Part shown: in pieces, positions 9,557 through 55,351 of the stretch
Layout of the letters: each line of letters starts with the position of its first letter
How positions within the stretch are numbered: the stretch's first letter is position 1
IMG/VR virus record: IMGVR_UViG_3300037297_000066
Location: 248,001-312,000 of that record
Strand: one strand, 5' to 3'
DNA: 64,000 nucleotides
The notes under the pieces: model-generated
Seen by the model: the letters and a program-made list of their open reading frames with translations, nothing else
The model's database searches: none
Told to the model about the DNA's origin: nothing
Position numbers and translations under genes: made by a program

Positions 9557-9634
9557 GCTCTCGGACCCCGTGGAAGGGGCGACGGATTCTAACCCCGTGT
9601 CAGAGTGAGGGTTCAACTCCCTCCGAGAGCGCCA
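9557..9634 (+). tRNA. tRNA-Sup(CUA), amber anticodon
   Basis: GCTCTCG/CGAGAGC acceptor, loop TT-CTA-AC, GAGGG-TTCAACT-CCCTC, ends GCCA. Confidence 0.75.
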
Positions 9635-9635
9635 T

Positions 9636-9714
9636 GGGGACGTAGCTCAGTGGTTGAGAGCGGCGAGCTCTAAACTCGTGTCTGTCGGGGGTTCGAGTCC
9701 CTCCGTCCTCACCA
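9636..9714 (+). tRNA. tRNA-Sup(CUA), amber anticodon
   Basis: GGGGACG/CGTCCTC, D-arm GCTC-AGTGGTTGA-GAGC, GCGAG-CT-CTA-AA-CTCGT, ends ACCA. Confidence 0.85.
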
Positions 9715-30696: not shown

Positions 30697-30893
30697 GATA
30701 GTAGGGACTAGTTCCCTTCGATCCTTGACAACTTGACAGGACTTTGGATGTCCGCCTCGCCACCTCCTAAGGGTGGAAACGTGGACTCTCAGATCCCCCC
30801 GGTATGGAACCGGAAACGGCTGAGGTTCGCAGCGGTGGTTATCCTCTCCTGAAATTGCCCGTGGGGTTCGTCGGAAACGGTGACCCCACATTT

Positions 30894-30967: not shown

Positions 30968-31133
30968 GACTGACATCCCGCCGAGATGAGCCTACAAGCA
31001 ATCTGCTGGTTCGAATCCAGCCTCCGGCACCGGGGCTTAGCCCTATCCCTGCCGGAGTGGCCAAATTGGAAAAGGCAACAGTCTGAAGAAACTGTGTACA
31101 ACGCAATCCCGCTCTCACACTCGGATGTCAGTC
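30968..31133 (+). ncRNA. circularly permuted tRNA-like RNA with conserved terminal helix (Y-RNA-like), copy 1
   Basis: 11-bp terminal stem GACTGACATCC/GGATGTCAGTC; T-arm precedes acceptor hairpin, D-arm and anticodon-like arm. Confidence 0.8.
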
Positions 31134-31462: not shown

Positions 31463-31566
31463 CTGACCCAGCGCAATTTCCTCCAACAGGTTGGCGTAGA
31501 CGTGGTTCGAGTCCACGAGGATACCGTTGGGTACGGCTTGTCGAGGGGCCCCTTGGCAAGTCTATT

Positions 31567-31740: not shown

Positions 31741-31814
31741 GGGTCTAAGGCTGAGGTAGCCGGCTGGTTTCCAAGTCCAGTGACGATGGGGTTCGATTCC
31801 TCATAGACCCGCCA
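31741..31814 (+). tRNA. tRNA-Trp(CCA)
   Basis: loop TT-CCA-AG, G73, CCA. Confidence 0.7.
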
Positions 31815-31973
31815 GACGACATCCCGCCGGGATGAGCATACAAGCAAACGTTGGTTCGAATCCAACCTTCCCCACCAGGGCCTAGCCCAACCAATGGGGA
31901 AGTAGCCTAGTGGATAGGCAGCGGAAAGTAACTCCGTCGCAAGACTGAACCGCTCTCACACTCGGATGTCGTC
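31815..31973 (+). ncRNA. circularly permuted tRNA-like RNA (Y-RNA-like), copy 2
   Basis: 10-bp terminal stem GACGACATCC/GGATGTCGTC; acceptor CTTCCCC-ACCA...GGGGAAG. Confidence 0.8.
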
Positions 31974-32133: not shown

Positions 32134-32297
32134 ATCGAGCGTCCCGCCGAGATGAGCATACAAGCAATATGTTGGTTCGAATCCAACCTCCCCCCCTAGG
32201 GCCTAGCCCAACCAAACGGGGGAGTAGCCTAACGGTAAGGCAGCGGACTCTTAATCCGTGCGAAAGCATACCCCGCTCCCTCACTCGGACGCTCGAT
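32134..32297 (+). ncRNA. circularly permuted tRNA-like RNA (Y-RNA-like), copy 3; Lys(CTT)-type anticodon arm
   Basis: 11-bp terminal stem ATCGAGCGTCC/GGACGCTCGAT; GCGGA-CT-CTT-AA-TCCGT. Confidence 0.8.
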
Positions 32298-35042: not shown

Positions 35043-35091
35043 CCCCAGCAGACACACTTGGACGGTATGCCGTCCCGCCGTGTCGGGAGAG
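35043..35091 (+). promoter_or_regulatory. copy of the conserved RNA helix overlapping the RBS of the TROVE-like gene (putative autoregulatory operator)
   Basis: GACAC-ACTT-GGACGG-TATG-CCGTCC-CGCC-GTGTC directly before GGGAGAG-ATG. Confidence 0.6.
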
Positions 35092-37011
35092 ATGAAAATG
35101 GTAGACCAGGTACAGCGTGAGAACCTGGGTCCGGCAGAGCGTATCATCAACGTCCTGTTGACCTACGAGGACCACATGGTCCACAACCGGGTTGGGATCG
35201 TAGAGCCCGATCCAGACAGCCAGATCGGCCTTCGCTGGACCCAGGCAACTTGGGTCGAGAAGGACGGCAAGAAGGTTGTCTACAAGCTCCTCCCTGGGGC
35301 CCGGGGACGAAACGGAAAGACCACTCGGCGCAAGGTCGAAGTGGGCACTCTCTGGAACGACGGCACGGTTCGCAGTGCCGATCGTCGGAAGATCGGGGAG
35401 CTCCGTCAGCCTGGCCTCTTTCCCGAAGTGGCAGTCTGGATGTACCGACAGGTGGCTGAGATCTACAAGCTCGACAACGAGTTCTGTGCTCGTTGGGCCA
35501 GCTACGCTTACTCCCAGACCCACCGAGATCTGAAGGTGGTACTGGCGGCCTTCCTCCTGGTTCAGGCTCGCAAGGGTGACCCTGTGATGGACCAGGGCAA
35601 GGTAGCCTTCTTCGACGACGACTTCCGTGACGTGGGTGAGGCAATGTGCCTTCACTACGGTGGGAAGTCCGACAAGTCTGCTCTCGATGCGAAGCTTCTG
35701 CTCCGCATTCGGAAGATTCTGGAGGTCCCTGAGATCGCCCAGATCAACCGAGATCTTGGGTTCGGGAAGTCGGCTCGGAGGGCTTACCTGGGTCGTTGGC
35801 CCAGGGTCGTTCAGAAGTGGCTGAGATACCGGGAAGACAACCCGGTTCTGCTGCGGGGCTTGGTCAACAAGGGTGCTTTCCGAGCAACCGTACAGGACTT
35901 GGCTCAGCAGTCTCGGTACAGTCCGTCGAGCCCCCTCTTCTACCAGATCCTTCGGTGGCCTCAGAAGCAGGCTGACGGGGGACACCGGAAGATGGCTCTC
36001 GACCAGAAGGTGACCAAGCAGGAATCCTGGGCGGGTAAGACCGAACAGGAGATCTGCGAGATCATCACCAGTCAGAGGACTGGTTGGAAGCGTGTCACGA
36101 CTCTGGTTCCGTCAGAGATTGGGGTTACCCGAGCCATCATGGCAGCAGCTGTGGAGGCAGGGTCCCTCTCGGACAAGGACCTGATCAACCACACGCCACT
36201 TTTGGAAGAACTGGGCCTCTTGCAGGACCAGGACGTTCGGGGGCGTTGGGAGGCTGCGCTTCAGGCTGCCGAGGACCGTCGAGCTGCTAACGTGGCTCGT
36301 AACGTCAAGAGCCAGCAGACTCGTGAGCAACTCGAAGGGGCTGCTGACCAGTCTGTCCTGAAGGCTGTCGAAGAGGTGGCTACAGGGATTCGGGTCTTCT
36401 TCTGTGTGGACCGATCTTCCTCGATGGGTATCGCTATCGAGGCAGCCAAGGAGCACATCGAGAAGTTCTTGCCTGGGTTCCCGCCCGATCAGCTCTTCAT
36501 CTGTGCCTTCAACTCGTCTGCTCGGAAGGTGACTCTCAAGCAGCACTCGTCGGTTGGAGTTCGGGAAGCTTTCCGGGGCATGGTCGGCTCTGGAGGCACG
36601 GACTACGGTGCGGCTGTACGCTTCTTCTCGAAGCCCGAGTACATGCCAGCCGAGGAGGAGGTTTCGCTCTTCTTCTTCATCGGAGACGAAGCAGCGGACA
36701 CTCGTTCCTTGGTTCAGGCCGTTCGGAACTCGGATCTCAACATCGTGGCCTTCGCTCTGGTGAAGGTCGTGTCTCCCGGTTGGGACCCTGGACTCTGTGT
36801 TCAGGAAGCTGCAGCCCAGTTGGGTATCCCTGTGATCCCGATCGACGAGAAGGTGTTCTCGGACGTCTATGCGACCCCGAGGATCCTTCGTGACCTGATC
36901 GCAAATACGCCGGTAGCTCAGACCCCTGGTCACAGGGAGGTTCGGCGGGTGACCCTTCTGGACACCATTCTGGACACTGAGCTGCTCAAGAAGCCCCTGT
37001 GGGCTGCATGA
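35092..37011 (+). CDS. TROVE/Ro60-like RNA-binding protein with C-terminal vWA domain
   Basis: helical N-terminal region with TROVE-like pattern (LDAKLLLRI..YLGRWPRVVQKWL..FRATVQDLAQQSRYSP); MIDAS FCVDRSSSMG, GGTDYG and FIGDE. vWA is secure; TROVE is inferred. Confidence 0.7.
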   Translation: MKMVDQVQRENLGPAERIINVLLTYEDHMVHNRVGIVEPDPDSQIGLRWTQATWVEKDGKKVVYKLLPGARGRNGKTTRRKVEVGTLWNDGTVRSADRRKIGELRQPGLFPEVAVWMYRQVAEIYKLDNEFCARWASYAYSQTHRDLKVVLAAFLLVQARKGDPVMDQGKVAFFDDDFRDVGEAMCLHYGGKSDKSALDAKLLLRIRKILEVPEIAQINRDLGFGKSARRAYLGRWPRVVQKWLRYREDNPVLLRGLVNKGAFRATVQDLAQQSRYSPSSPLFYQILRWPQKQADGGHRKMALDQKVTKQESWAGKTEQEICEIITSQRTGWKRVTTLVPSEIGVTRAIMAAAVEAGSLSDKDLINHTPLLEELGLLQDQDVRGRWEAALQAAEDRRAANVARNVKSQQTREQLEGAADQSVLKAVEEVATGIRVFFCVDRSSSMGIAIEAAKEHIEKFLPGFPPDQLFICAFNSSARKVTLKQHSSVGVREAFRGMVGSGGTDYGAAVRFFSKPEYMPAEEEVSLFFFIGDEAADTRSLVQAVRNSDLNIVAFALVKVVSPGWDPGLCVQEAAAQLGIPVIPIDEKVFSDVYATPRILRDLIANTPVAQTPGHREVRRVTLLDTILDTELLKKPLWAA

Positions 37012-37019
37012 GGTGAAAC

Positions 37020-37958
37020 ATGGGTTGGAGAGATCTGCTTCAGACCGAGGATGAGACGTTCGTCTCCCCCTGGGTGGGAGGAAGGTCTCTCCGATCCTTC
37101 GATCGCTTCTGGCGTATCGAGGGAAAACTCCCTCAAGAGCATGGTTGGCATAGGTTCCGTCTGGCGGGCCGGAAGGCTTGTTGGACGGGGCCTGCTGATC
37201 AGTCTGGGGAGCTCAGGGATCGTCTGAGAGGCTACCTGGTAGCTGACCGACTCGTGCCAGATGAGGCTCGGGTCGAGACAGATCCAATCAAGCTGGCTCA
37301 GGGATTCGAGAGAGTTCACCTGATCGAGCCTGGTTTGGATCGGTTCGTTCGGGTAGTCGCTGGCCGGTCCTTCGAGGACGGCCCTCTCATCTACGACAGC
37401 CAGGAGTTCCCTCTTGGTCCCGAGGATGAGGTTCTTCAGGCATACTTCGACGAAGCCAAGTCTGTGGACCATGTCTCGGGGGTCGCCCCTGCTTTGGAGG
37501 CTGCGTTTCGTTTCGAATCGTGGCATCGGGAGGAGATCCGGCGGCGTCGAGAAGAGGAACGAAAGCGTCGGGAGGAAGAGGATCGGCAGCGTCAGTTGGA
37601 GGCTCGGAGACAGGAAATCATCGAGACTTTGGGGGATGCTGCTGGACGTCGGGAACTGGCTCGTTACGACTTTGCTGAGGCAGCCAGAGCTGCTTTGGCG
37701 GTAGGAGGAGCTCAGTACCTAGACTCTCGTCCCTCCTACAACAAGGGCGAGATGGTTGTTCGGTACCGGATGAACGGCCGGGGGTTGGAGTGCACTTGTG
37801 ACGCTCAGACCCTGAGGATCATCGATTCCGGCTGCTGTCTGACCAACCACGCCACTGGGGAGCAGACCGACACGAGGTTCACCCTGGAGTCACTTCCGGG
37901 GGTCATACAAGAAGCTGACCGTCGGCACATCTTGGTGGTGTATCGTCACGTAGACTGA
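37020..37958 (+). CDS. conserved hypothetical protein; C-terminal E2-like (UBC-fold) candidate
   Basis: coiled coil followed by IIDSGCCLT..FTLESLPGVIQEA, resembling the E2 GxICL..TLxxL pattern; operon context. Confidence 0.45.
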   Translation: MGWRDLLQTEDETFVSPWVGGRSLRSFDRFWRIEGKLPQEHGWHRFRLAGRKACWTGPADQSGELRDRLRGYLVADRLVPDEARVETDPIKLAQGFERVHLIEPGLDRFVRVVAGRSFEDGPLIYDSQEFPLGPEDEVLQAYFDEAKSVDHVSGVAPALEAAFRFESWHREEIRRRREEERKRREEEDRQRQLEARRQEIIETLGDAAGRRELARYDFAEAARAALAVGGAQYLDSRPSYNKGEMVVRYRMNGRGLECTCDAQTLRIIDSGCCLTNHATGEQTDTRFTLESLPGVIQEADRRHILVVYRHVD

Positions 37959-37966
37959 GAGGTACC

Positions 37967-38338
37967 ATGCAGGAATCAGGCGTTGTTTTGGATCTGAAGG
38001 AGCAGCCGATCTATTGGCACACCCCAGCGGATCGGACAACGGGGGCTATTCCTGACAGCCACACTCTGTGGGAGGTCCTCTGGGAGAATCGTGAAAACCT
38101 GTCTGGGTTTGCCCACAGTCATCCTGGCCGTGGGCTTCCCGGGCCATCCTACACGGATGTCACGACATTCTCCTCCATTGAGCGAGCTCTCGGAAAGAAG
38201 CTCAATTGGTGGATCACCAGCGAGGATCGGGTCGCCTTGGTCAGGTGGTTTGGTCCTGGGAAACACGACTACAAGGCACTTGCCGTAGAAGATGAACTGG
38301 TCTGGGTACCCAGACTGAGAGAACTTTCCTACCCTTAG
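37967..38338 (+). CDS. JAB/MPN metallo-isopeptidase
   Basis: N-terminal E and GFAHSHP..GPSYTDV (HxH-x7-S-x2-D). Confidence 0.85.
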   Translation: MQESGVVLDLKEQPIYWHTPADRTTGAIPDSHTLWEVLWENRENLSGFAHSHPGRGLPGPSYTDVTTFSSIERALGKKLNWWITSEDRVALVRWFGPGKHDYKALAVEDELVWVPRLRELSYP

Positions 38339-38366: not shown

Positions 38367-38627
38367 ATGGCAATCGAAGAGCATGAAGCACGTGTGAACA
38401 TCACCTGGGCTCAGCAGAACGGCGATCTGCCGGACCCAGTGGCATTCGACGCAACGGATGCCAACATCCTGACCTGGGCCACCGAAGCCGTCCGTGGTGG
38501 AGATGTCCCTGGAATCGAAGCTGACCAGAACGCCGACTTCGACGGGTACGTTGTGGAGCGATTCGCCTCCAAGGAGGAAGTCCCCTACAACCGGCTCGTG
38601 GTTCGGCCGAAGGCAGAGTTTGGTTGA
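38367..38627 (+). CDS. ubiquitin-like (beta-grasp) protein candidate
   Basis: 86 aa, strand-strand-helix-strand pattern, ends LVVRPKAEFG; lies between JAB and ThiF. Confidence 0.65.
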   Translation: MAIEEHEARVNITWAQQNGDLPDPVAFDATDANILTWATEAVRGGDVPGIEADQNADFDGYVVERFASKEEVPYNRLVVRPKAEFG

Positions 38628-38669: not shown

Positions 38670-39257
38670 ATGGAGATGAAGATGCAGACAGTGATGGTAG
38701 TGGGTGTGGGGGCCCTCGGATCCCACGCCATCCAATTCCTCCGAGGAGCAGCCCGGATTCGTGCCATCGACTTCGATCGGGTGGAGCAGAAGAATACCCT
38801 TTCTCAGTTTCACCCCAGGAATTCGGTGGGCAAGAACAAGGCCCAAGCCCTCCAGCAGGCGATGCAGTTCCTCTGGGGGATCAAGATCGAGGTCATTCCT
38901 CACAAGCTCGTTCAGGGCAACGCTCAGGTCGTTCTCAAGGGAGCGGACCTGGTTCTAGACTGCCTGGACAACGGGGCTTCCCGTGAGATCCTGCAGAAGG
39001 CTGTTCGGCAGGCCGGTATTCCGTGTCTTCATGGAGCTCTCTCTGCCGGGGGCATGTTCGGCCGGGTCATCTGGGACGATCTGTTCAATATCGACTACGA
39101 GTCTGGAGAAGGGATTGCCACTTGCGAGGATGGGGCTTTCCTGCCGTTCATCGGTCTGGTGAGCACCTACCTGGCTCGGAGCGCCCAAGCCTGGCTAGAA
39201 ACTGGGAAGCAGCTTAGCTTCCAGGTCTACCCTTCGGCCCCCGCCACCAGGATTTAG
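38670..39257 (+). CDS. ThiF/E1-like adenylyltransferase
   Basis: VVGVGALGS, IDFDRVEQKN, KNKAQAL and DLVLDCLDN motifs. Confidence 0.92.
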   Translation: MEMKMQTVMVVGVGALGSHAIQFLRGAARIRAIDFDRVEQKNTLSQFHPRNSVGKNKAQALQQAMQFLWGIKIEVIPHKLVQGNAQVVLKGADLVLDCLDNGASREILQKAVRQAGIPCLHGALSAGGMFGRVIWDDLFNIDYESGEGIATCEDGAFLPFIGLVSTYLARSAQAWLETGKQLSFQVYPSAPATRI

Positions 39258-39261
39258 GGGG

Positions 39262-39289
39262 TTGAAAACAAGCTCCAACGGTGTATAGT
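39262..39289 (+). promoter_or_regulatory. promoter-like TTGAAA-N16-TATAGT upstream of the tRNA-like RNA trio
   Basis: contains the GGTGTATAGT motif seen at 4 intergenic sites. Confidence 0.55.
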
Positions 39290-39361
39290 GCATCCGTTGG
39301 TTTCTGGAGAACATCGTGAGAAAGCTGGAATGAGACTTTGCCGGGTTTCGGCCCGGCTTCT

Positions 39362-39504
39362 GGGGCTTCACAGGGGATGTGGTTCCCCGCCTGTTTTTTG
39401 GAACAGGAGCATCAGCTCTACCCCGCCACCACACTCGGTTTCCTAGGAAACCCGCCGTAGTTGGCCTACAAGCATTACCGGTTCGACTCCGGGAAGCCCC
39501 GCCA
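39362..39504 (+). ncRNA. CCA-ended tRNA-like RNA with the conserved helix inserted in the variable region
   Basis: GGGGCTT/AAGCCCC-G-CCA; T-arm CCGG-TTCGACT-CCGG; ACTCGG-TTTCC-TA-GGAAA-CCCGCC. Confidence 0.75.
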
Positions 39505-39513
39505 CTCAAAAAC

Positions 39514-39649
39514 GCCGCTCTTGAGGCACGGTCGCCTCACTTTCCCTACAAGAAAGCTAAGCTAGCCCCGCATGTACACTCGGCCCTCTCGGGGGCCCGC
39601 CGTATGGTGCATACAAGCAATTCCGGTTCGACTCCGGAGAGCGGCGCCA
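39514..39649 (+). ncRNA. second CCA-ended tRNA-like RNA with the inserted conserved helix
   Basis: GCCGCTC/GAGCGGC-G-CCA; D-arm TGAGGC/GCCTCA; ACTCGG-CCC..GGG-CCCGCC. Confidence 0.75.
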
Positions 39650-39777
39650 GGACATCCCGCAGGAACGTGCCTACACGCATACAGCTCAATTGGTAGAGCA
39701 TCGGATTCCTATTCCGAGGGTTGGGGGTTCAAATCCCCCTATGTGACCTTCCTACCGCACCTCCACTCGGATGTCCT
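39649..39777 (+). ncRNA. conserved helix enclosing a tRNA-Arg(CCT) body (39676-39746)
   Basis: AGGACATCC/GGATGTCCT stem; inner TCGGA-TT-CCT-AT-TCCGA, no CCA. Confidence 0.7.
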
Positions 39778-42753: not shown

Positions 42754-42777
42754 CAACTTCTGGTGTATAGTGCTATC

Positions 42778-43359
42778 ATGAAGTTCGCTGACCTTCCTCG
42801 ACTGGCCCTGGGACACACCATTCAGCTGGCTGGAGCCATCTGGAGCGGTGAGGGCAAGAACTACCTTTGCTTCCTTCCGGATGAGGAGGAAGCTCTCCCC
42901 CTGGAGATCGTGACGCTCACCCAGGAGGAGTGGGAGGAGTTCCTGCTGCAGACGGACCTGCTCAACGTCGAGGCTCAGGTCCTGGACGAGGCTGGCAAGG
43001 TGGTCAAGGCCATCGTCCGGAAGAGCCAGCGGCAGATCTCTCAGAACGTCTCCTGGGAGGTGTTCCGTCGGGACGCCTACCACTGCCGTTACTGTGGCCG
43101 GGGGGACGTTCCCTTGACGGTGGACCACCTGGTTTTGTGGGAAGAGGGAGGCCCCTCGGTTCCAGCCAACTTGGTGAGTTCCTGCAAGAAGTGCAACAAG
43201 ACCCGGGGAAACACTCCTTACGCTGAGTGGTTGAACCACCCGTACTACAAGCGAGTTTCCCAAGACCTTTCCAGAGCCACAATCGCTCAGAACTTGGCTT
43301 TGGTTCCGACTCTGGCTACCATTCCCAGGCAGCCGCACAAGCCCGGGAAAAGGAGGTAG
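42778..43359 (+). CDS. HNH endonuclease domain protein
   Basis: VFRRDAYHCRYCG..LTVDHLV..GG..NLVSSCKKCNKTRG. Confidence 0.9.
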   Translation: MKFADLPRLALGHTIQLAGAIWSGEGKNYLCFLPDEEEALPLEIVTLTQEEWEEFLLQTDLLNVEAQVLDEAGKVVKAIVRKSQRQISQNVSWEVFRRDAYHCRYCGRGDVPLTVDHLVLWEEGGPSVPANLVSSCKKCNKTRGNTPYAEWLNHPYYKRVSQDLSRATIAQNLALVPTLATIPRQPHKPGKRR

Positions 43360-45044: not shown

Positions 45045-45503
45045 TTGACGATCGACGGGGTGTTGTGGCATTGTTCGTTCGTGTCCCAACTCGGTGACAT
45101 TCTGAAGTCTCCGAATGCCGTGGAGACGTTGGCGGTCTTTCGGACCAGAACCTTCAGGTACGAAGACTTGTTCGAGTTGTTCGAGGACCTGAAGGGGTTG
45201 TTCGTTCTTGGGTATACCGCCTTATGGTCAGATAGGCCCCCTGATTACGGTATAATAGCGTACAAGGGGGAAGGTGACGAAGAGTCGTCTGTGGATCTGC
45301 AGATTTCATTTAAAGAGGTCAGAGCTCTTCGACTTCAGGACACGCCGGAACACACTACTCTTGTAAGGGCTTTTCAGACTTCCGAAGGTAAACGACTGTT
45401 GTTGGAAGCTCTTCGGGAGAAGGCTCTTTCCACTCCTAAGGAAGATCCTGTACCCTTACCTACTTGCTGGGAACGGCTCCTAGCACAAGACACGCCCTCG
45501 TAG
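45045..45503 (+). CDS. hypothetical protein (C-terminal TCWERLL); start uncertain
   Basis: 152-aa ORF. Confidence 0.6.
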   Translation: MTIDGVLWHCSFVSQLGDILKSPNAVETLAVFRTRTFRYEDLFELFEDLKGLFVLGYTALWSDRPPDYGIIAYKGEGDEESSVDLQISFKEVRALRLQDTPEHTTLVRAFQTSEGKRLLLEALREKALSTPKEDPVPLPTCWERLLAQDTPS

Positions 45504-45566
45504 CTCAGGGGATAGAGCAGCGGTTTCCTAAACCGAAGATCGGCCGTTCGAATCGGCCCGGGGGTA
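45494..45566 (+). tRNA. tRNA-Arg(CCT)
   Basis: TT-CCT-AA. Confidence 0.85.
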
Positions 45567-45569
45567 CCG

Positions 45570-54877: not shown

Positions 54878-55260
54878 GGGGCCGATTTGGTTTCGACAGA
54901 GGCATGGAGGTTGTAGTTGCGAGCAGAGGCGCTCGGCCCTTTCCAAAACCGAGCCGTAAATAGCTGCAAACGATAATGCAATCGCTGATCAGGCCATCGC
55001 AGCCTGAAAGCCGTCCGACCTTGAGATAGCCTTGGTAAAGGAAGGACGTCAGCACTAAGGCCACTGGACCACAAGGATTGCCTAACCACTTGTGATCGAC
55101 ATTGCAGAATGGCTTTGACGGGCGAGATTCCCGGAACCTCAGAAAGGCAGCCAGCGGCCTCCTGAGTTTTGAACATCCCCTTGGGGACTAGTTGGCTACG
55201 CTCGTGAATGAGGCTACAAGCAAAGGTTTCTGGAACCGGGTTCGAGTCCCGGCGGCTCCA
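54878..55260 (+). ncRNA. ssrA: tmRNA; tag peptide ANDNAIADQAIAA
   Basis: GGGGCCG..TTTCGAC 5' end, G3:U70 acceptor CGGCTCC-A, T-arm CCGGG-TTCGAGT-CCCGG; tag ORF 54966-55007. Confidence 0.92.
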
Positions 55261-55351
55261 CTAAGCAATTTCAAGTCCTGTCAAGGTGTCTGAGCGTCTC
55301 TGATGCTCACTTGTAGGAGTGCTATGAAAAAGCTGAAACGATAGGTGTACC

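What the first reader, a model, noticed from the sequence alone, without database searches (positions are those of the whole stretch)
39362..39649. Two CCA-ended tRNA mimics with the conserved helix grafted into the variable arm
Seen: 39362-39504 and 39514-39649 have perfect 7-bp acceptors, G73, encoded CCA, a CCGG-TTCGACT-CCGG T-arm and TACAAGCA before it. The helix is closed as an internal hairpin (GGTTTCC-TA-GGAAACC; GGCCCT-CTCG-GGGGCC), which is the un-permuted isomer of the 31-32 kb elements. Anticodon loops are non-canonical (6-nt loop; CC-TAC-AA). They start about 100 nt after the E1 stop, behind their own promoter-like motif. Inference: aminoacylatable or CCA-bearing adaptor RNAs; having both topologies in one genome suggests the fold matters more than the ends.
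Basis: partly seen in the sequence, partly recalled or inferred. Interest (0 to 1): 0.82.

Follow-up and report, generated by a model that had tools for sequence, protein, structure and literature searches.

The report
tRNA-shaped partner RNAs of Ro60-like operon
The two elements are real, conserved tRNA-shaped non-coding RNAs whose oversized variable arm carries a conserved helix; they belong to an undescribed RNA family that comes in three "wiring" versions and always sits beside an operon for a Ro60-like protein plus a ubiquitin-like tagging set, in huge phages and in bacteria.

Summary
Windows 39362-39504 (D1) and 39514-39649 (D2) each have a 7-bp acceptor, G73, an encoded CCA and a CCGG-TTCGACT-CCGG T arm. 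Each also has TACAAGCA upstream of the T arm, and a roughly 40-nt variable arm whose hairpin is flanked by the invariant C-ACUC-GG / CC-CGCC-G loop.

A covariance model finds about 120 relatives in related huge phages and in Myxococcota-type bacteria. All six helices covary: 90.8% of cells are paired, against 55.8% in shuffles.

They are not decoders. The anticodon-like loops, the triplets and the discriminator are not conserved.

The same helix module occurs in three topologies:
- closed in the variable arm (D1, D2);
- formed by the RNA ends, with a closed acceptor (31-32 kb elements A-C);
- formed by the ends around a whole tRNA-like body (39650-39776, annotated "tRNA-Arg").

The RNAs lie next to a conserved operon. 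Its first protein is Ro60/TROVE-like by predicted fold. It is followed by an unknown protein, a JAB peptidase, a Gly-ended Ubl and a ThiF-type E1.

Best reading: these are Y-RNA-like tRNA mimics, processed like tRNAs, that serve this Ro60-like/Ubl system. Binding, expression and aminoacylation are untested. They form a new variant of the YrlA kind and are not members of Rfam YrlA.

The parts
39362..39504 (+). D1, a U-type tRNA mimic. Acceptor 39362-39368/39494-39500. D-like hairpin 39373-39388. Anticodon-like hairpin 39390-39407. Extra hairpin about 39407-39418. Variable arm 39425-39465, with CUCG at 39434-39437 and inner hairpin at 39437-39452. UACAAGCA 39467-39474. T arm 39478-39492. G73 at 39501. 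CCA 39502-39504.
   Evidence: covariance model R1 82.3 bits
39514..39649 (+). D2, a U-type tRNA mimic. Acceptor 39514-39520/39639-39645. D-like hairpin 39522-39539. Anticodon-like arm 39540-39556 (loop CCUACAA). Variable arm 39570-39610, with CUCG at 39579-39582 and inner hairpin at 39582-39597. UACAAGCA 39612-39619. T arm 39622-39638. G73 at 39646. CCA 39647-39649.
   Evidence: R1 101.6 bits
39650..39776 (+). E-type element. The terminal 8-bp helix GGACAUCC (39650-39657) / GGAUGUCC (39769-39776), with CUCG at 39766-39769 and UACACGCA, encloses the tRNA-like body annotated tRNA-Arg(CCU) at 39675-39748. That body has an A1-A72 mismatch and C8.
   Evidence: (z -3.2)
30968..31133 (+). Element A, P-type (permuted). 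The ends form the helix GACUGACAUCC/GGAUGUCAGUC. Internal order is UACAAGCA, T arm, acceptor closed by a hairpin, D arm, anticodon arm, CACACUCGG. It is flanked directly by tRNA-Asp and tRNA-Asn.
31815..31973 (+). Element B, P-type. The acceptor 3' strand CUUCCCC is followed by A-CCA inside the closing loop.
32136..32295 (+). Element C, P-type. Its 3' half is called tRNA by Rfam at 32218-32283 (39.4 bits).
39262..39289 (+). Sigma-70-like promoter motif TTGAAA-16-TATAGT between the E1 stop and D1.
   Evidence: 1 found; 0.2 expected
39341..39358 (+). GC-rich leader hairpin GCCGGG-UUUCGG-CCCGGC followed by UUCU, directly 5' of D1. Its role is unknown.
   Evidence: weak SorX 3'-end match
35080..37011 (+). 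643-aa Ro60-like protein with an N-terminal TROVE-like fold and a C-terminal vWA domain. It is the first gene of the conserved operon.
   Evidence: Pfam detects VWA_2 only. The AF2 model has pLDDT 82 and its top 9 Foldseek PDB hits are all Ro60/TROVE. ESM-feature neighbours of residues 1-435 are TROVE/DUF2828.
37020..37958 (+). 312-aa conserved operon protein of unknown fold (beta domain, long helix, Cys-containing C-terminal domain).
37967..38338 (+). JAB/JAMM-type peptidase, a weak Pfam match below the curated cutoff.
   Evidence: Prok-JAB, E 4.6e-4, 20.5 bits against cutoff 25; synteny
38367..38627 (+). 86-aa ubiquitin-like-type protein ending ...AEFG, followed by TGA TAA. The bacterial homologue ends ...PFGAAP.
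38670..39257 (+). ThiF/MoeB-type E1-like adenylyltransferase (195 aa).

Best explanation
D1 and D2 are members of a previously uncatalogued family of tRNA-derived non-coding RNAs.

Proposed maturation and fold:
- Each is probably cut out like a tRNA. RNase P would cut at G1, and the 3' end would be at or trimmed to CCA.
- Each folds into the tRNA L-shape. The evidence is the invariant GG in the D loop and the invariant GGUUCGAnUCC T loop.
- The body carries a roughly 40-nt variable arm made of an outer helix, a conserved internal loop (5'-CUC / 3'-CAn, with G-C closing pairs) and an inner capped helix.
- An invariant single-stranded ACAAGC lies before the T arm.

Proposed function:
- This helix-plus-loop platform is the constant part of the family. 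I infer that it is the docking site for the Ro60-like (TROVE-fold plus vWA) protein encoded at the head of the adjacent operon, as the conserved helix of Y RNAs docks Ro60.
- The tRNA-shaped body would then be the effector-recruiting or tRNA-mimicking half, as in bacterial YrlA.
- The RNP would work together with the co-encoded unknown 312-aa protein, JAB peptidase, Gly-ended Ubl and ThiF-type E1, in RNA surveillance or handling of tRNA-like substrates during infection or stress.

Shown here:
- the structure and its conservation;
- the three topologies;
- the operon linkage in phages and bacteria;
- the Ro60-like fold prediction.

Inferred, not shown:
- tRNA-type processing;
- Ro60-like binding to the helix;
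- the biological role.
For: Structure:
- The MFE cloverleaves include the extra arm.
- Model R1 finds 127 matches at E<=1e-6, 121 of them with the CUCG-type motif.
- On 126 distinct sequences 90.8% of cells pair, against 55.8% in shuffles and at most 54.7% when slid. The covariation score is 0.842 against 0.21. All six helices have double-sided changes.

Not decoders:
- U33 is present in 55 of 95 seven-nucleotide loops.
- There are 30 different anticodon-position triplets, and the discriminator is not conserved.
- ARAGORN and Rfam call neither D1 nor D2.

tRNA-type ends:
- C74 is present in 114/121 and CCA in 32/121, against 350/903 for ordinary tRNA genes in the same loci.
- In P-type relatives, 9/21 have NCCA right after the acceptor 3' strand inside the closing loop. 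About 0.3 would be expected by chance.

Shared platform in three topologies.

Operon linkage:
- 89/122 elements lie within 3 kb after the E1 gene and 23 within 3 kb before the Ro60-like gene. The median gap is 193 nt in 39 loci.
- The same operon with two P-type RNAs, and no tRNA array, occurs in an 11.5-Mb Deltaproteobacteria assembly.
- A U-type RNA lies 160 nt after E1 in a Sandaracinaceae contig.
- An RNA-only pattern scan of all IMG/VR gave 83 stretches, 80 of them fetched. Of those 80, 44 hold operon genes or overlap operon loci.

Ro60-likeness:
- The nine best Foldseek hits are Ro60, Rsr and phage Ro60, spanning 546-630 columns at E 3e-8 to 1e-6. They rank ahead of all plain vWA domains.
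- ESM neighbours of the N-terminal 435 residues are TROVE clusters.

Precedent:
- YrlA Y RNAs are tRNA mimics encoded next to Ro60.
- M. smegmatis YrlA is cut by RNase P and receives CCA (PMC4201824; bioRxiv 10.1101/312249).
Against: - There is no expression, end-mapping or binding data, and no RNA runs were listed.
- TROVE similarity rests on a predicted structure with TM-scores below 0.5, and on an ESM score of 0.80 that the tool itself calls a lead only.
- Pfam TROVE and profile searches of PDB sequences see only the vWA domain.
- The Y-RNA Ro60-binding motif GNCGAAN0-1G is not conserved in the family. The invariant CUCG lies on the opposite strand.
- The Rfam YrlA model does not match any of the elements.
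- The linkage is to the operon as a whole, so the direct partner could be another of its proteins.
- In phages the elements also lie in tRNA-rich regions.
Confidence: 0.6

Rival explanations
1. The RNAs serve the Ubl/E1/JAB half of the operon rather than the Ro60-like protein. For example, they could be a tRNA-shaped substrate, scaffold or acceptor for the ThiF-type E1 and its Gly-ended Ubl, in sulfur transfer or modification of the RNA, or in acyl transfer to the CCA end.
For: - U-type elements sit directly after the E1 gene in most loci.
- They expose a tRNA-like CCA end.
- ThiF/MoeB-type E1s with Ubl carriers act in tRNA thiolation pathways (TtuB/TtuC, Urm1/Uba4; established knowledge).
- The E1 gives weak matches to the tRNA-modifying TcdA family.
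- The Ubl ends in Gly, and the bacterial form needs trimming.
Against: - No thiolase or PP-loop enzyme is present in the operon.
- The 312-aa protein has no recognisable fold.
- The constant feature of all three topologies is the helix platform, not the acceptor end. The acceptor is closed in many P-type copies and buried in the E-type.
- The best E1 matches are generic ThiF/MoeB.
Confidence: 0.15
2. They are working tRNAs or aminoacylated adaptors with an exotic variable arm, for example for recoding in this phage, or a tmRNA-like rescue function.
For: - They have a perfect acceptor stem, G73, an encoded CCA and a canonical T loop.
- The genome carries 53 tRNA genes, two CUA-anticodon tRNAs and a tmRNA.
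- A long variable arm plus G73 recalls tRNA-Ser and tRNA-Sec (established knowledge).
Against: - The anticodon-like loops are 6 nt (D1) or have C33 (D2).
- Across 121 relatives U33 is present in only 58% of the 7-nt loops, 30 different triplets occur and the discriminator varies.
- There is no G3-U70, no tag reading frame and no pseudoknots.
- There is no hit to the Rfam tRNA, tRNA-Sec or tmRNA models.
- The same family occurs with a closed acceptor (P-type).
Confidence: 0.07
3. They are phage tRNA decoys that soak up host anticodon nucleases or other tRNA-targeting defences, independently of the neighbouring operon.
For: - They lie in a huge phage with a large tRNA complement.
- They are tRNA-shaped but non-decoding.
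- Phage tRNAs are known to counter tRNA-cleaving defences (established knowledge).
Against: - The same RNAs sit beside the same operon in bacterial chromosomal contexts without tRNA arrays.
- The anticodon loop, which is the usual nuclease target, is the least conserved part.
- The conserved parts are the helix platform and ACAAGC.
Confidence: 0.08
4. They are non-functional tRNA-derived repeats or mere processing spacers of tRNA arrays.
For: - The elements occur in tandem copies.
- A-C are embedded between tRNA genes with 1-3-nt spacers.
Against: - There are compensatory changes in every helix, with invariant loop motifs, at 41-45% mean identity.
- Position next to the operon is conserved across phyla.
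Confidence: 0.03

Closest known systems
YrlA-type bacterial Y RNAs (Rfam RF02553; Chen et al. 2014, PMC4201824; Wang et al. 2018, bioRxiv 10.1101/312249)
   Same: - Two-module design: a helix module plus a tRNA-like module with conserved D/T-loop core.
- Encoded next to a Ro60-type gene, in bacteria and phages.
- Resembles a circularly permuted tRNA.
   Different: - In YrlA the ends lie at the anticodon stem, and YrlA lacks both an anticodon loop and a free CCA end.
- Here the helix sits in the variable-arm position and a full anticodon-like arm is kept.
- D1 and D2 have open acceptor ends with CCA.
- The GNCGAAN0-1G motif is not conserved, and CUCG and ACAAGC are invariant instead.
- The Rfam model gives no match.
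- The partner protein is not a Pfam-recognisable TROVE protein, and it comes with Ubl, E1 and JAB genes.
Mycobacterium smegmatis YrlA after processing (PMC4201824)
   Same: - It has a seven-bp acceptor-like stem.
[quoted passage not shown]
- The P-type relatives here often encode NCCA in the closing loop (9/21).
   Different: - That RNA is encoded permuted and becomes two pieces.
- D1 and D2 are encoded in normal tRNA order, with the helix closed as a hairpin.
One-piece versus two-piece (circularly permuted) tmRNA genes, and permuted tRNA genes
   Same: The same fold is encoded in both normal and permuted gene order, with the acceptor end regenerated by processing.
   Different: - There is no tag ORF, no pseudoknots and no G3-U70.
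- Here different gene orders coexist in one genome, and there is a third order.
Thermus phage phiLo Ro60 with Yrl1/Yrl2 (PMC12135203; PDB 9KOP, 9L5Y)
   Same: - A phage-encoded Ro60 with phage-encoded partner RNAs next to the gene.
- It is the best structural match of the 643-aa protein.
   Different: - The phiLo RNAs are stem-bulge-stem Y RNAs with a CGAA motif.
- They are not described as tRNA-shaped with a CCA end, and no Ubl/E1/JAB genes are described with them.
Class II tRNAs (Ser, Leu, Tyr, Sec) with long variable arms
   Same: - An extra arm between the anticodon and T arms.
- G73 in D1 and D2.
- D stems of 5-6 bp with short loops recall tRNA-Sec.
   Different: - The arm is about 40 nt with a conserved internal loop.
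- The anticodons are not conserved.
- There are no Rfam tRNA or tRNA-Sec hits.

Membership tests
Canonical decoding tRNA | Recognised by tRNA detectors (ARAGORN, Rfam RF00005) | tested here: not met
   D1 and D2 are absent from the ARAGORN list and from Rfam even at E<=10.
Canonical decoding tRNA | 7-nt anticodon loop with U33, and an anticodon conserved among orthologues | tested here: not met
   D1 has a 6-nt loop and D2 has C33. In relatives, 55/95 seven-nucleotide loops have U33 and 30 different triplets occur.
Canonical decoding tRNA | 7-bp acceptor, 5-bp T stem with a GTTCRANYC loop, and GG in the D loop | tested here: met
YrlA / bacterial Y RNA (RF02553) | Match to the Rfam covariance model at the gathering score | tested here: not met
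   There is no YrlA hit on D1/D2. The only YrlA hit in 30.4-32.4 kb is 22.9 bits, spanning two ordinary tRNAs.
YrlA / bacterial Y RNA (RF02553) | GNCGAAN0-1G (CGAA) Ro60-binding motif on the 5' strand of the terminal stem | tested here: not met
   The window copies have the near-matches GCCGAG and GCCGUA. The motif is not conserved in alignments A3 and A5, where the invariant CUCG lies on the other strand.
YrlA / bacterial Y RNA (RF02553) | Closed acceptor-like stem, with ends at the anticodon-stem position and no anticodon loop | tested here: not met
   D1 and D2 have an open acceptor with CCA and a complete anticodon-like arm. The P-type has a closed acceptor, but its ends are in the variable-arm position.
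YrlA / bacterial Y RNA (RF02553) | tRNA-like D/T core | tested here: met
   GG and GGUUCGAnUCC are invariant.
YrlA / bacterial Y RNA (RF02553) | Encoded adjacent to a Ro60 (TROVE) gene | tested here: inconclusive
   Adjacency to the 643-aa gene's operon is strong. However, the protein is TROVE-like only by predicted fold and ESM features, not by Pfam.
YrlA / bacterial Y RNA (RF02553) | Physical binding to Ro60 | not testable with these tools
   Needs pull-down or EMSA.
tmRNA | G3-U70 alanine identity, tag reading frame, pseudoknots, no anticodon arm | tested here: not met
   D1 and D2 have G3-C70 and C3-G70, an anticodon-like arm and no ORF. There is no Rfam tmRNA hit. The window's real tmRNA is at 54878-55263.
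Ro60/TROVE protein family (for the 643-aa partner) | Pfam TROVE (PF05731) match | tested here: not met
   Only VWA_2 is found, even at E<=10. The PDB profile search sees only vWA proteins.
Ro60/TROVE protein family (for the 643-aa partner) | Helical-repeat domain followed by a vWA domain, with a fold like solved Ro60 structures | tested here: met
   The top 9 Foldseek hits are 9kop, 1yvp, 2nvo, 9nep, 9l5y, 2i91 and 1yvr, spanning 546-630 columns at E 3e-8 to 1e-6. TM-scores are only 0.21-0.48.

The most novel reading that the evidence does not exclude
The operon may be a new kind of RNP system in which a tRNA-shaped RNA with a free CCA end is the acceptor or adaptor of a ubiquitin-like conjugation step.

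In this reading, the ThiF-type E1 adenylates the Gly-ended Ubl and passes it to, or is guided by, the RNA, which is held on the Ro60-like ring. This would be a protein-level analogue of aminoacylation.

The three RNA topologies would then be alternative ways of presenting or hiding that end. None of my evidence excludes this, and none of it tests it.
Probability: 0.07. Interest if true: 0.95.

Novelty: new variant of a known kind. Interest (0 to 1): 0.78.

Why it matters
Y RNAs that mimic tRNA are known, but only as permuted molecules without a CCA end, next to recognisable Ro60 genes. This finding differs in several ways:
- The same helix platform is wired to a tRNA body in three different orders within one genome, including a normal-order form with a free CCA end.
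- The RNA family is conserved across huge phages and several bacterial phyla.
- It points to a Ro60-like protein family that sequence models miss.
- That protein is joined in one operon to a ubiquitin-like protein, an E1 and a JAB peptidase.

This gives a concrete, testable handle on two open questions. One is what the tRNA-like half of bacterial Y RNAs is for. The other is how Ro60-type RNPs connect to protein-modification machinery.

It also means some "tRNA genes" in huge-phage annotations, such as tRNA-Arg at 39675-39748, are probably mimics.

Tried and rejected
- Rfam at permissive thresholds gave no family for D1/D2 or A-C.
- A loose DNA pattern (ACACTCGG..CCCGCCG) scanned over viral contigs returned only chance-like hits, because the window-specific loop sequence is not conserved. 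It was abandoned.
- A regex for the window's exact motifs found nothing in relatives. Profile and covariance-model searches were needed.
- Sequence searches of the 643-aa protein found no TROVE by phmmer or by profile against PDB, nor in Pfam, NCBIfam or PADLOC.
- The 312-aa protein gave a confident model but no PDB fold match.
- No RNA-seq runs were listed.
- Two papers were not held: Burroughs & Aravind 2016, and Sim et al. 2020.
- I considered reading E1 through the upstream stop and rejected it. The upstream ORF is a separate Gly-ended small protein, and in relatives it is often separated from E1 by kilobases.
- I considered a link between the UACAAGCA in the window's tmRNA and this family. 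One extra occurrence is within chance, so it is left open.
Full report
**1. Where this is**

The window is part of IMGVR_UViG_3300037297_000066, a 437-kb huge-phage contig. DNA runs place it in wetland, marsh and marine-sediment metagenomes. The window holds 52 ARAGORN tRNA calls and a tmRNA, all on the + strand.

**2.

- Both have a perfect 7-bp acceptor, G73 and an encoded CCA.
- Both have the CCGG-UUCGACU-CCGG T arm, with TACAAGCA a few bases upstream.
- Both have an internal hairpin flanked by ACACUCGG on the 5' side and CCGCCGUA on the 3' side.

The flank pair occurs twice against 0.00 expected. TACAAGCA occurs 8 times against 0.74 expected. Unconstrained MFE folding returns a cloverleaf plus a long extra arm for both, with z-scores of -2.64 and -2.11. 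The anticodon-position loops are abnormal. D1 has 6 nt, and D2 has CCUACAA with C33. Neither ARAGORN nor any Rfam model reports these elements, even at E<=10.

**3. It is a family with covariation**

The 643-aa protein encoded 2.3 kb upstream has more than 1,300 relatives. It anchors 72 loci in huge-phage contigs.
- An nhmmer profile of the shared segment found many homologous elements in those loci.
- 56 of them had a 7-bp acceptor whose 5' strand lies 100-131 nt before the T stem.
- A covariance model built from 54 of them (R1) finds 127 matches at E<=1e-6 in 1.27 Mb. Of these, 121 carry the CUCG-type motif.
- There are usually 2-6 tandem copies per locus.

Covariation on 126 distinct sequences is strong.
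- 90.8% of cells pair, against 55.8% in shuffles and at most 54.7% when partners are slid.
- The covariation score is 0.842 against 0.21.
- 25 of 26 pairs show double-sided changes.
- The supported helices are the acceptor, the anticodon-like stem, the outer variable-arm helix, a closing G-C pair, the inner variable-arm helix and the T stem.

Invariant or nearly invariant positions are GG in the D loop, CUCG on the 5' side of the inner helix, ACAAG(C) before the T arm, GGUUCGAnUCC, and C74. The window-specific CGCC side of the loop is not conserved in relatives, where the usual sequence is CAn.

**4. They are not decoders**

Among the 121 relatives:
- 95 have a 7-nt loop, and only 55 of those have U33.
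- 30 different triplets occupy the anticodon position.
- The discriminator is A in 50, G in 39, U in 23 and C in 9.
- Positions 74-76 are CCA in 32, CUA in 21, CCG in 18 and CUG in 14.

Ordinary tRNA genes in the same loci encode CCA in 350 of 903 cases. The 3' ends therefore look like those of tRNA genes that rely partly on the CCA-adding enzyme. No aminoacylation identity set is conserved.

**5. Three topologies share one platform**

- **P-type.** The 31-32 kb elements A (30968-31133), B (31815-31973) and C (32136-32295) carry the same motifs in a different order. The order is: helix 5' strand, second-helix strand, UACAAGCA, T arm, acceptor closed by a hairpin, D arm, anticodon arm, CACACUCGG, helix 3' strand.
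- **Rotation test.** I cut A-C in the acceptor loop and joined the ends in a script, then scored them against a profile of the un-permuted family. Rotated C matches profile positions 18-131 (39.7 bits) and rotated A matches 39-131 (32.9 bits). The native order scores 27.7 bits over positions 83-131 only. Rotated B barely changed, matching 81-131 at 29.2 bits against 27.7 native. Shuffles give no hit.
- **P-type relatives.** An alignment of 31 P-type elements shows the same invariants. In 9 of 21 P-type relatives, NCCA follows the acceptor 3' strand inside the closing loop. This fits RNase P cleavage and a regenerated CCA end, as shown experimentally for M. smegmatis YrlA (PMC4201824).
- **E-type.** Directly after D2, GGACAUCC (39650-39657) pairs with GGAUGUCC (39769-39776). 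The pairing is preceded by CACUCG and UACACGCA. It encloses the gene annotated tRNA-Arg(CCU) at 39675-39748, which has an A1-A72 mismatch and C8 (z -3.2).
- **E-type relatives.** Roughly 25 occur in related loci, often starting at the base after a U-type element. Their inner tRNA-like bodies carry assorted anticodons, including AAA, AAC, AUC, AAU and AUG, which bacteria do not normally use.

The window holds exactly three P-type, two U-type and one E-type copies.

**6. Linkage to an operon**

The five-gene order is conserved in about 65 phage loci. The genes are: the 643-aa protein, a 312-aa protein, JAB, an 86-aa protein, and a ThiF-type E1.
- 89 of 122 U-type elements lie within 3 kb after E1, and 23 lie within 3 kb before the first gene. 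The median distance from E1 to the first element is 193 nt.
- The operon also occurs in bacteria, mostly Myxococcota, and also in Gemmatimonadota, Verrucomicrobiota, Leptospirales and others.
- In an 11.5-Mb Deltaproteobacteria assembly, the 443-nt spacer after ThiF holds two P-type elements. No tRNA gene lies in that 22-kb locus.
- A Sandaracinaceae contig has a U-type element 160 nt after E1.

As a test that was not anchored on the protein, I scanned all IMG/VR contigs with an RNA-only pattern. This gave 83 stretches, of which 80 were fetched. Of those 80, 35 have operon genes in the fetched flank and 9 more overlap operon loci. By contig name, several others lie on operon-bearing contigs. 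The remainder is about the number expected by chance, by my own rough estimate.

**7. The proteins**

- **643-aa protein.** Sequence models see only a vWA domain. Its AlphaFold model has pLDDT 82. The nine best PDB matches are all Ro60/TROVE proteins, namely Thermus phage phiLo Ro60, Xenopus Ro60 and D. radiodurans Rsr. They span 546-630 columns and rank ahead of all plain vWA domains, although TM-scores are below 0.5.
- **Its N-terminal part.** Language-model neighbours of residues 1-435 alone are mostly TROVE or DUF2828 clusters, with a score of 0.80. The tool rates this as a lead only.
- **86-aa protein.** It ends AEFG-stop in the phage and PFGAAP in a bacterium. This is the pattern of a ubiquitin-like protein whose terminal Gly is exposed by a JAB peptidase. 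That reading is an inference from established knowledge.
- **E1.** It is a short ThiF/MoeB adenylation domain.
- **312-aa protein.** It has no recognisable fold.

**8. Mechanism**

Shown:
- a conserved tRNA-shaped RNA with a conserved helix-and-loop platform;
- three topologies of it;
- tight linkage to the operon;
- a Ro60-like fold prediction.

Inferred:
- The RNAs are released by tRNA-processing enzymes. A-C are flanked by tRNAs with 1-3-nt spacers. D2's CCA abuts the E-type helix.
- The platform docks the Ro60-like protein as Y-RNA helices dock Ro60.
- The tRNA body recruits, or imitates a substrate of, a tRNA-binding activity. The Ubl/E1/JAB set would act on the RNP or its targets.

I put 0.6 on this Y-RNA-like reading as a whole. 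That the RNA family is real is close to certain. The link to the operon is about 0.85. The Ro60-like protein being the direct binder is about 0.5.

**9. Comparison with known systems**

Canonical YrlA lacks a CCA end and an anticodon loop, and its Ro60 module extends from the anticodon stem (bioRxiv 10.1101/312249). Here the platform is in the variable-arm position, or at the acceptor end in the E-type. The anticodon arm is kept, and D1 and D2 have free CCA ends. The CGAA-type motif is not conserved, and the Rfam YrlA model does not match. This works like a YrlA-type Y RNA but is not a member of that Rfam family. I rate it a new variant of a known kind.

**10. Limits**

- There is no expression, end-mapping or binding evidence.
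- The Ro60 assignment is structural and moderate in strength.
- The covariance-model alignment leans towards the model's structure, although the slid and shuffled controls are far lower.
- The P-type and E-type sets in relatives were collected by requiring a terminal helix, so that helix's covariation was not scored.

Noticed in passing
window 39650-39776 (tRNA-Arg call 39675-39748): The annotated tRNA-Arg(CCU) is enclosed by the same conserved helix, CUCG and UACACGCA motifs. It has an A1-A72 mismatch and C8. It is probably a third-topology mimic rather than a decoder. A second tRNA-Arg(CCU) lies at 45494-45568.
   Followed up: yes
window 9557-9634 and 9636-9714: Two tandem tRNAs have a CUA anticodon (ARAGORN calls them 'Pyl'), which suggests amber suppression or recoding. 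Treating TAG as sense lengthens ORFs, but treating TGA as sense lengthens them more, so the genetic code was not settled.
   Followed up: partly
window 54878-55263 (8-mer at 55215-55222): The phage tmRNA also has UACAAGCA upstream of its T arm, and it gives a weak 23-bit match to model R1. One extra occurrence is within chance.
   Followed up: partly
window 31741-31811: A tRNA-like element with an encoded CCA lies directly 5' of element B. It scores 27.2 bits in Rfam, just below the tRNA cutoff, and ARAGORN does not call it.
   Followed up: no
window 30697-30893 and 31464-31566: These intergenic stretches inside the tRNA array carry hairpins, including a T-arm-like CGUGGUUCGAGUCCACG. They are not assigned to any family.
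   Followed up: no
window 38367-38627; L193 13143-13409: The 86-aa protein ends AEFG followed by TGA TAA. The bacterial homologue carries three extra residues (AAP) after the Gly. This is the pattern of a Ubl precursor trimmed by the neighbouring JAB peptidase.
   Followed up: partly
related loci, e.g. L150 15511-21873, L125 13561-18216, L158 16296-20343: In many related phages the Ubl-like gene and the E1 gene are separated by 0.2-5.6 kb of inserted DNA. They are adjacent in the window and in bacteria.
   Followed up: no
window 37020-37958: The conserved 312-aa operon protein gives a confident AF2 model (pLDDT 86) with a beta domain, a roughly 50-residue helix and a Cys-bearing C-terminal domain. 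It has no PDB fold match at E<0.2.
   Followed up: partly
L240 3323-4340 (contig IMGVR_UViG_3300032782_000001, 436 kb): Five pattern matches lie in tandem within 1 kb. They are on an operon-bearing phage genome but outside the operon-anchored locus, so this is a second cluster of such RNAs elsewhere in that genome.
   Followed up: no
window 39341-39358: The GC-rich hairpin GCCGGG-UUUCGG-CCCGGC, followed by UUCU, ends three bases before D1's first nucleotide. It lies downstream of the promoter-like site. It could be the operon's terminator or a processing signal.
   Followed up: no
window 42763-43359: An HNH endonuclease ORF (Pfam E 6e-11) lies among the tRNA genes downstream of the locus.
   Followed up: no
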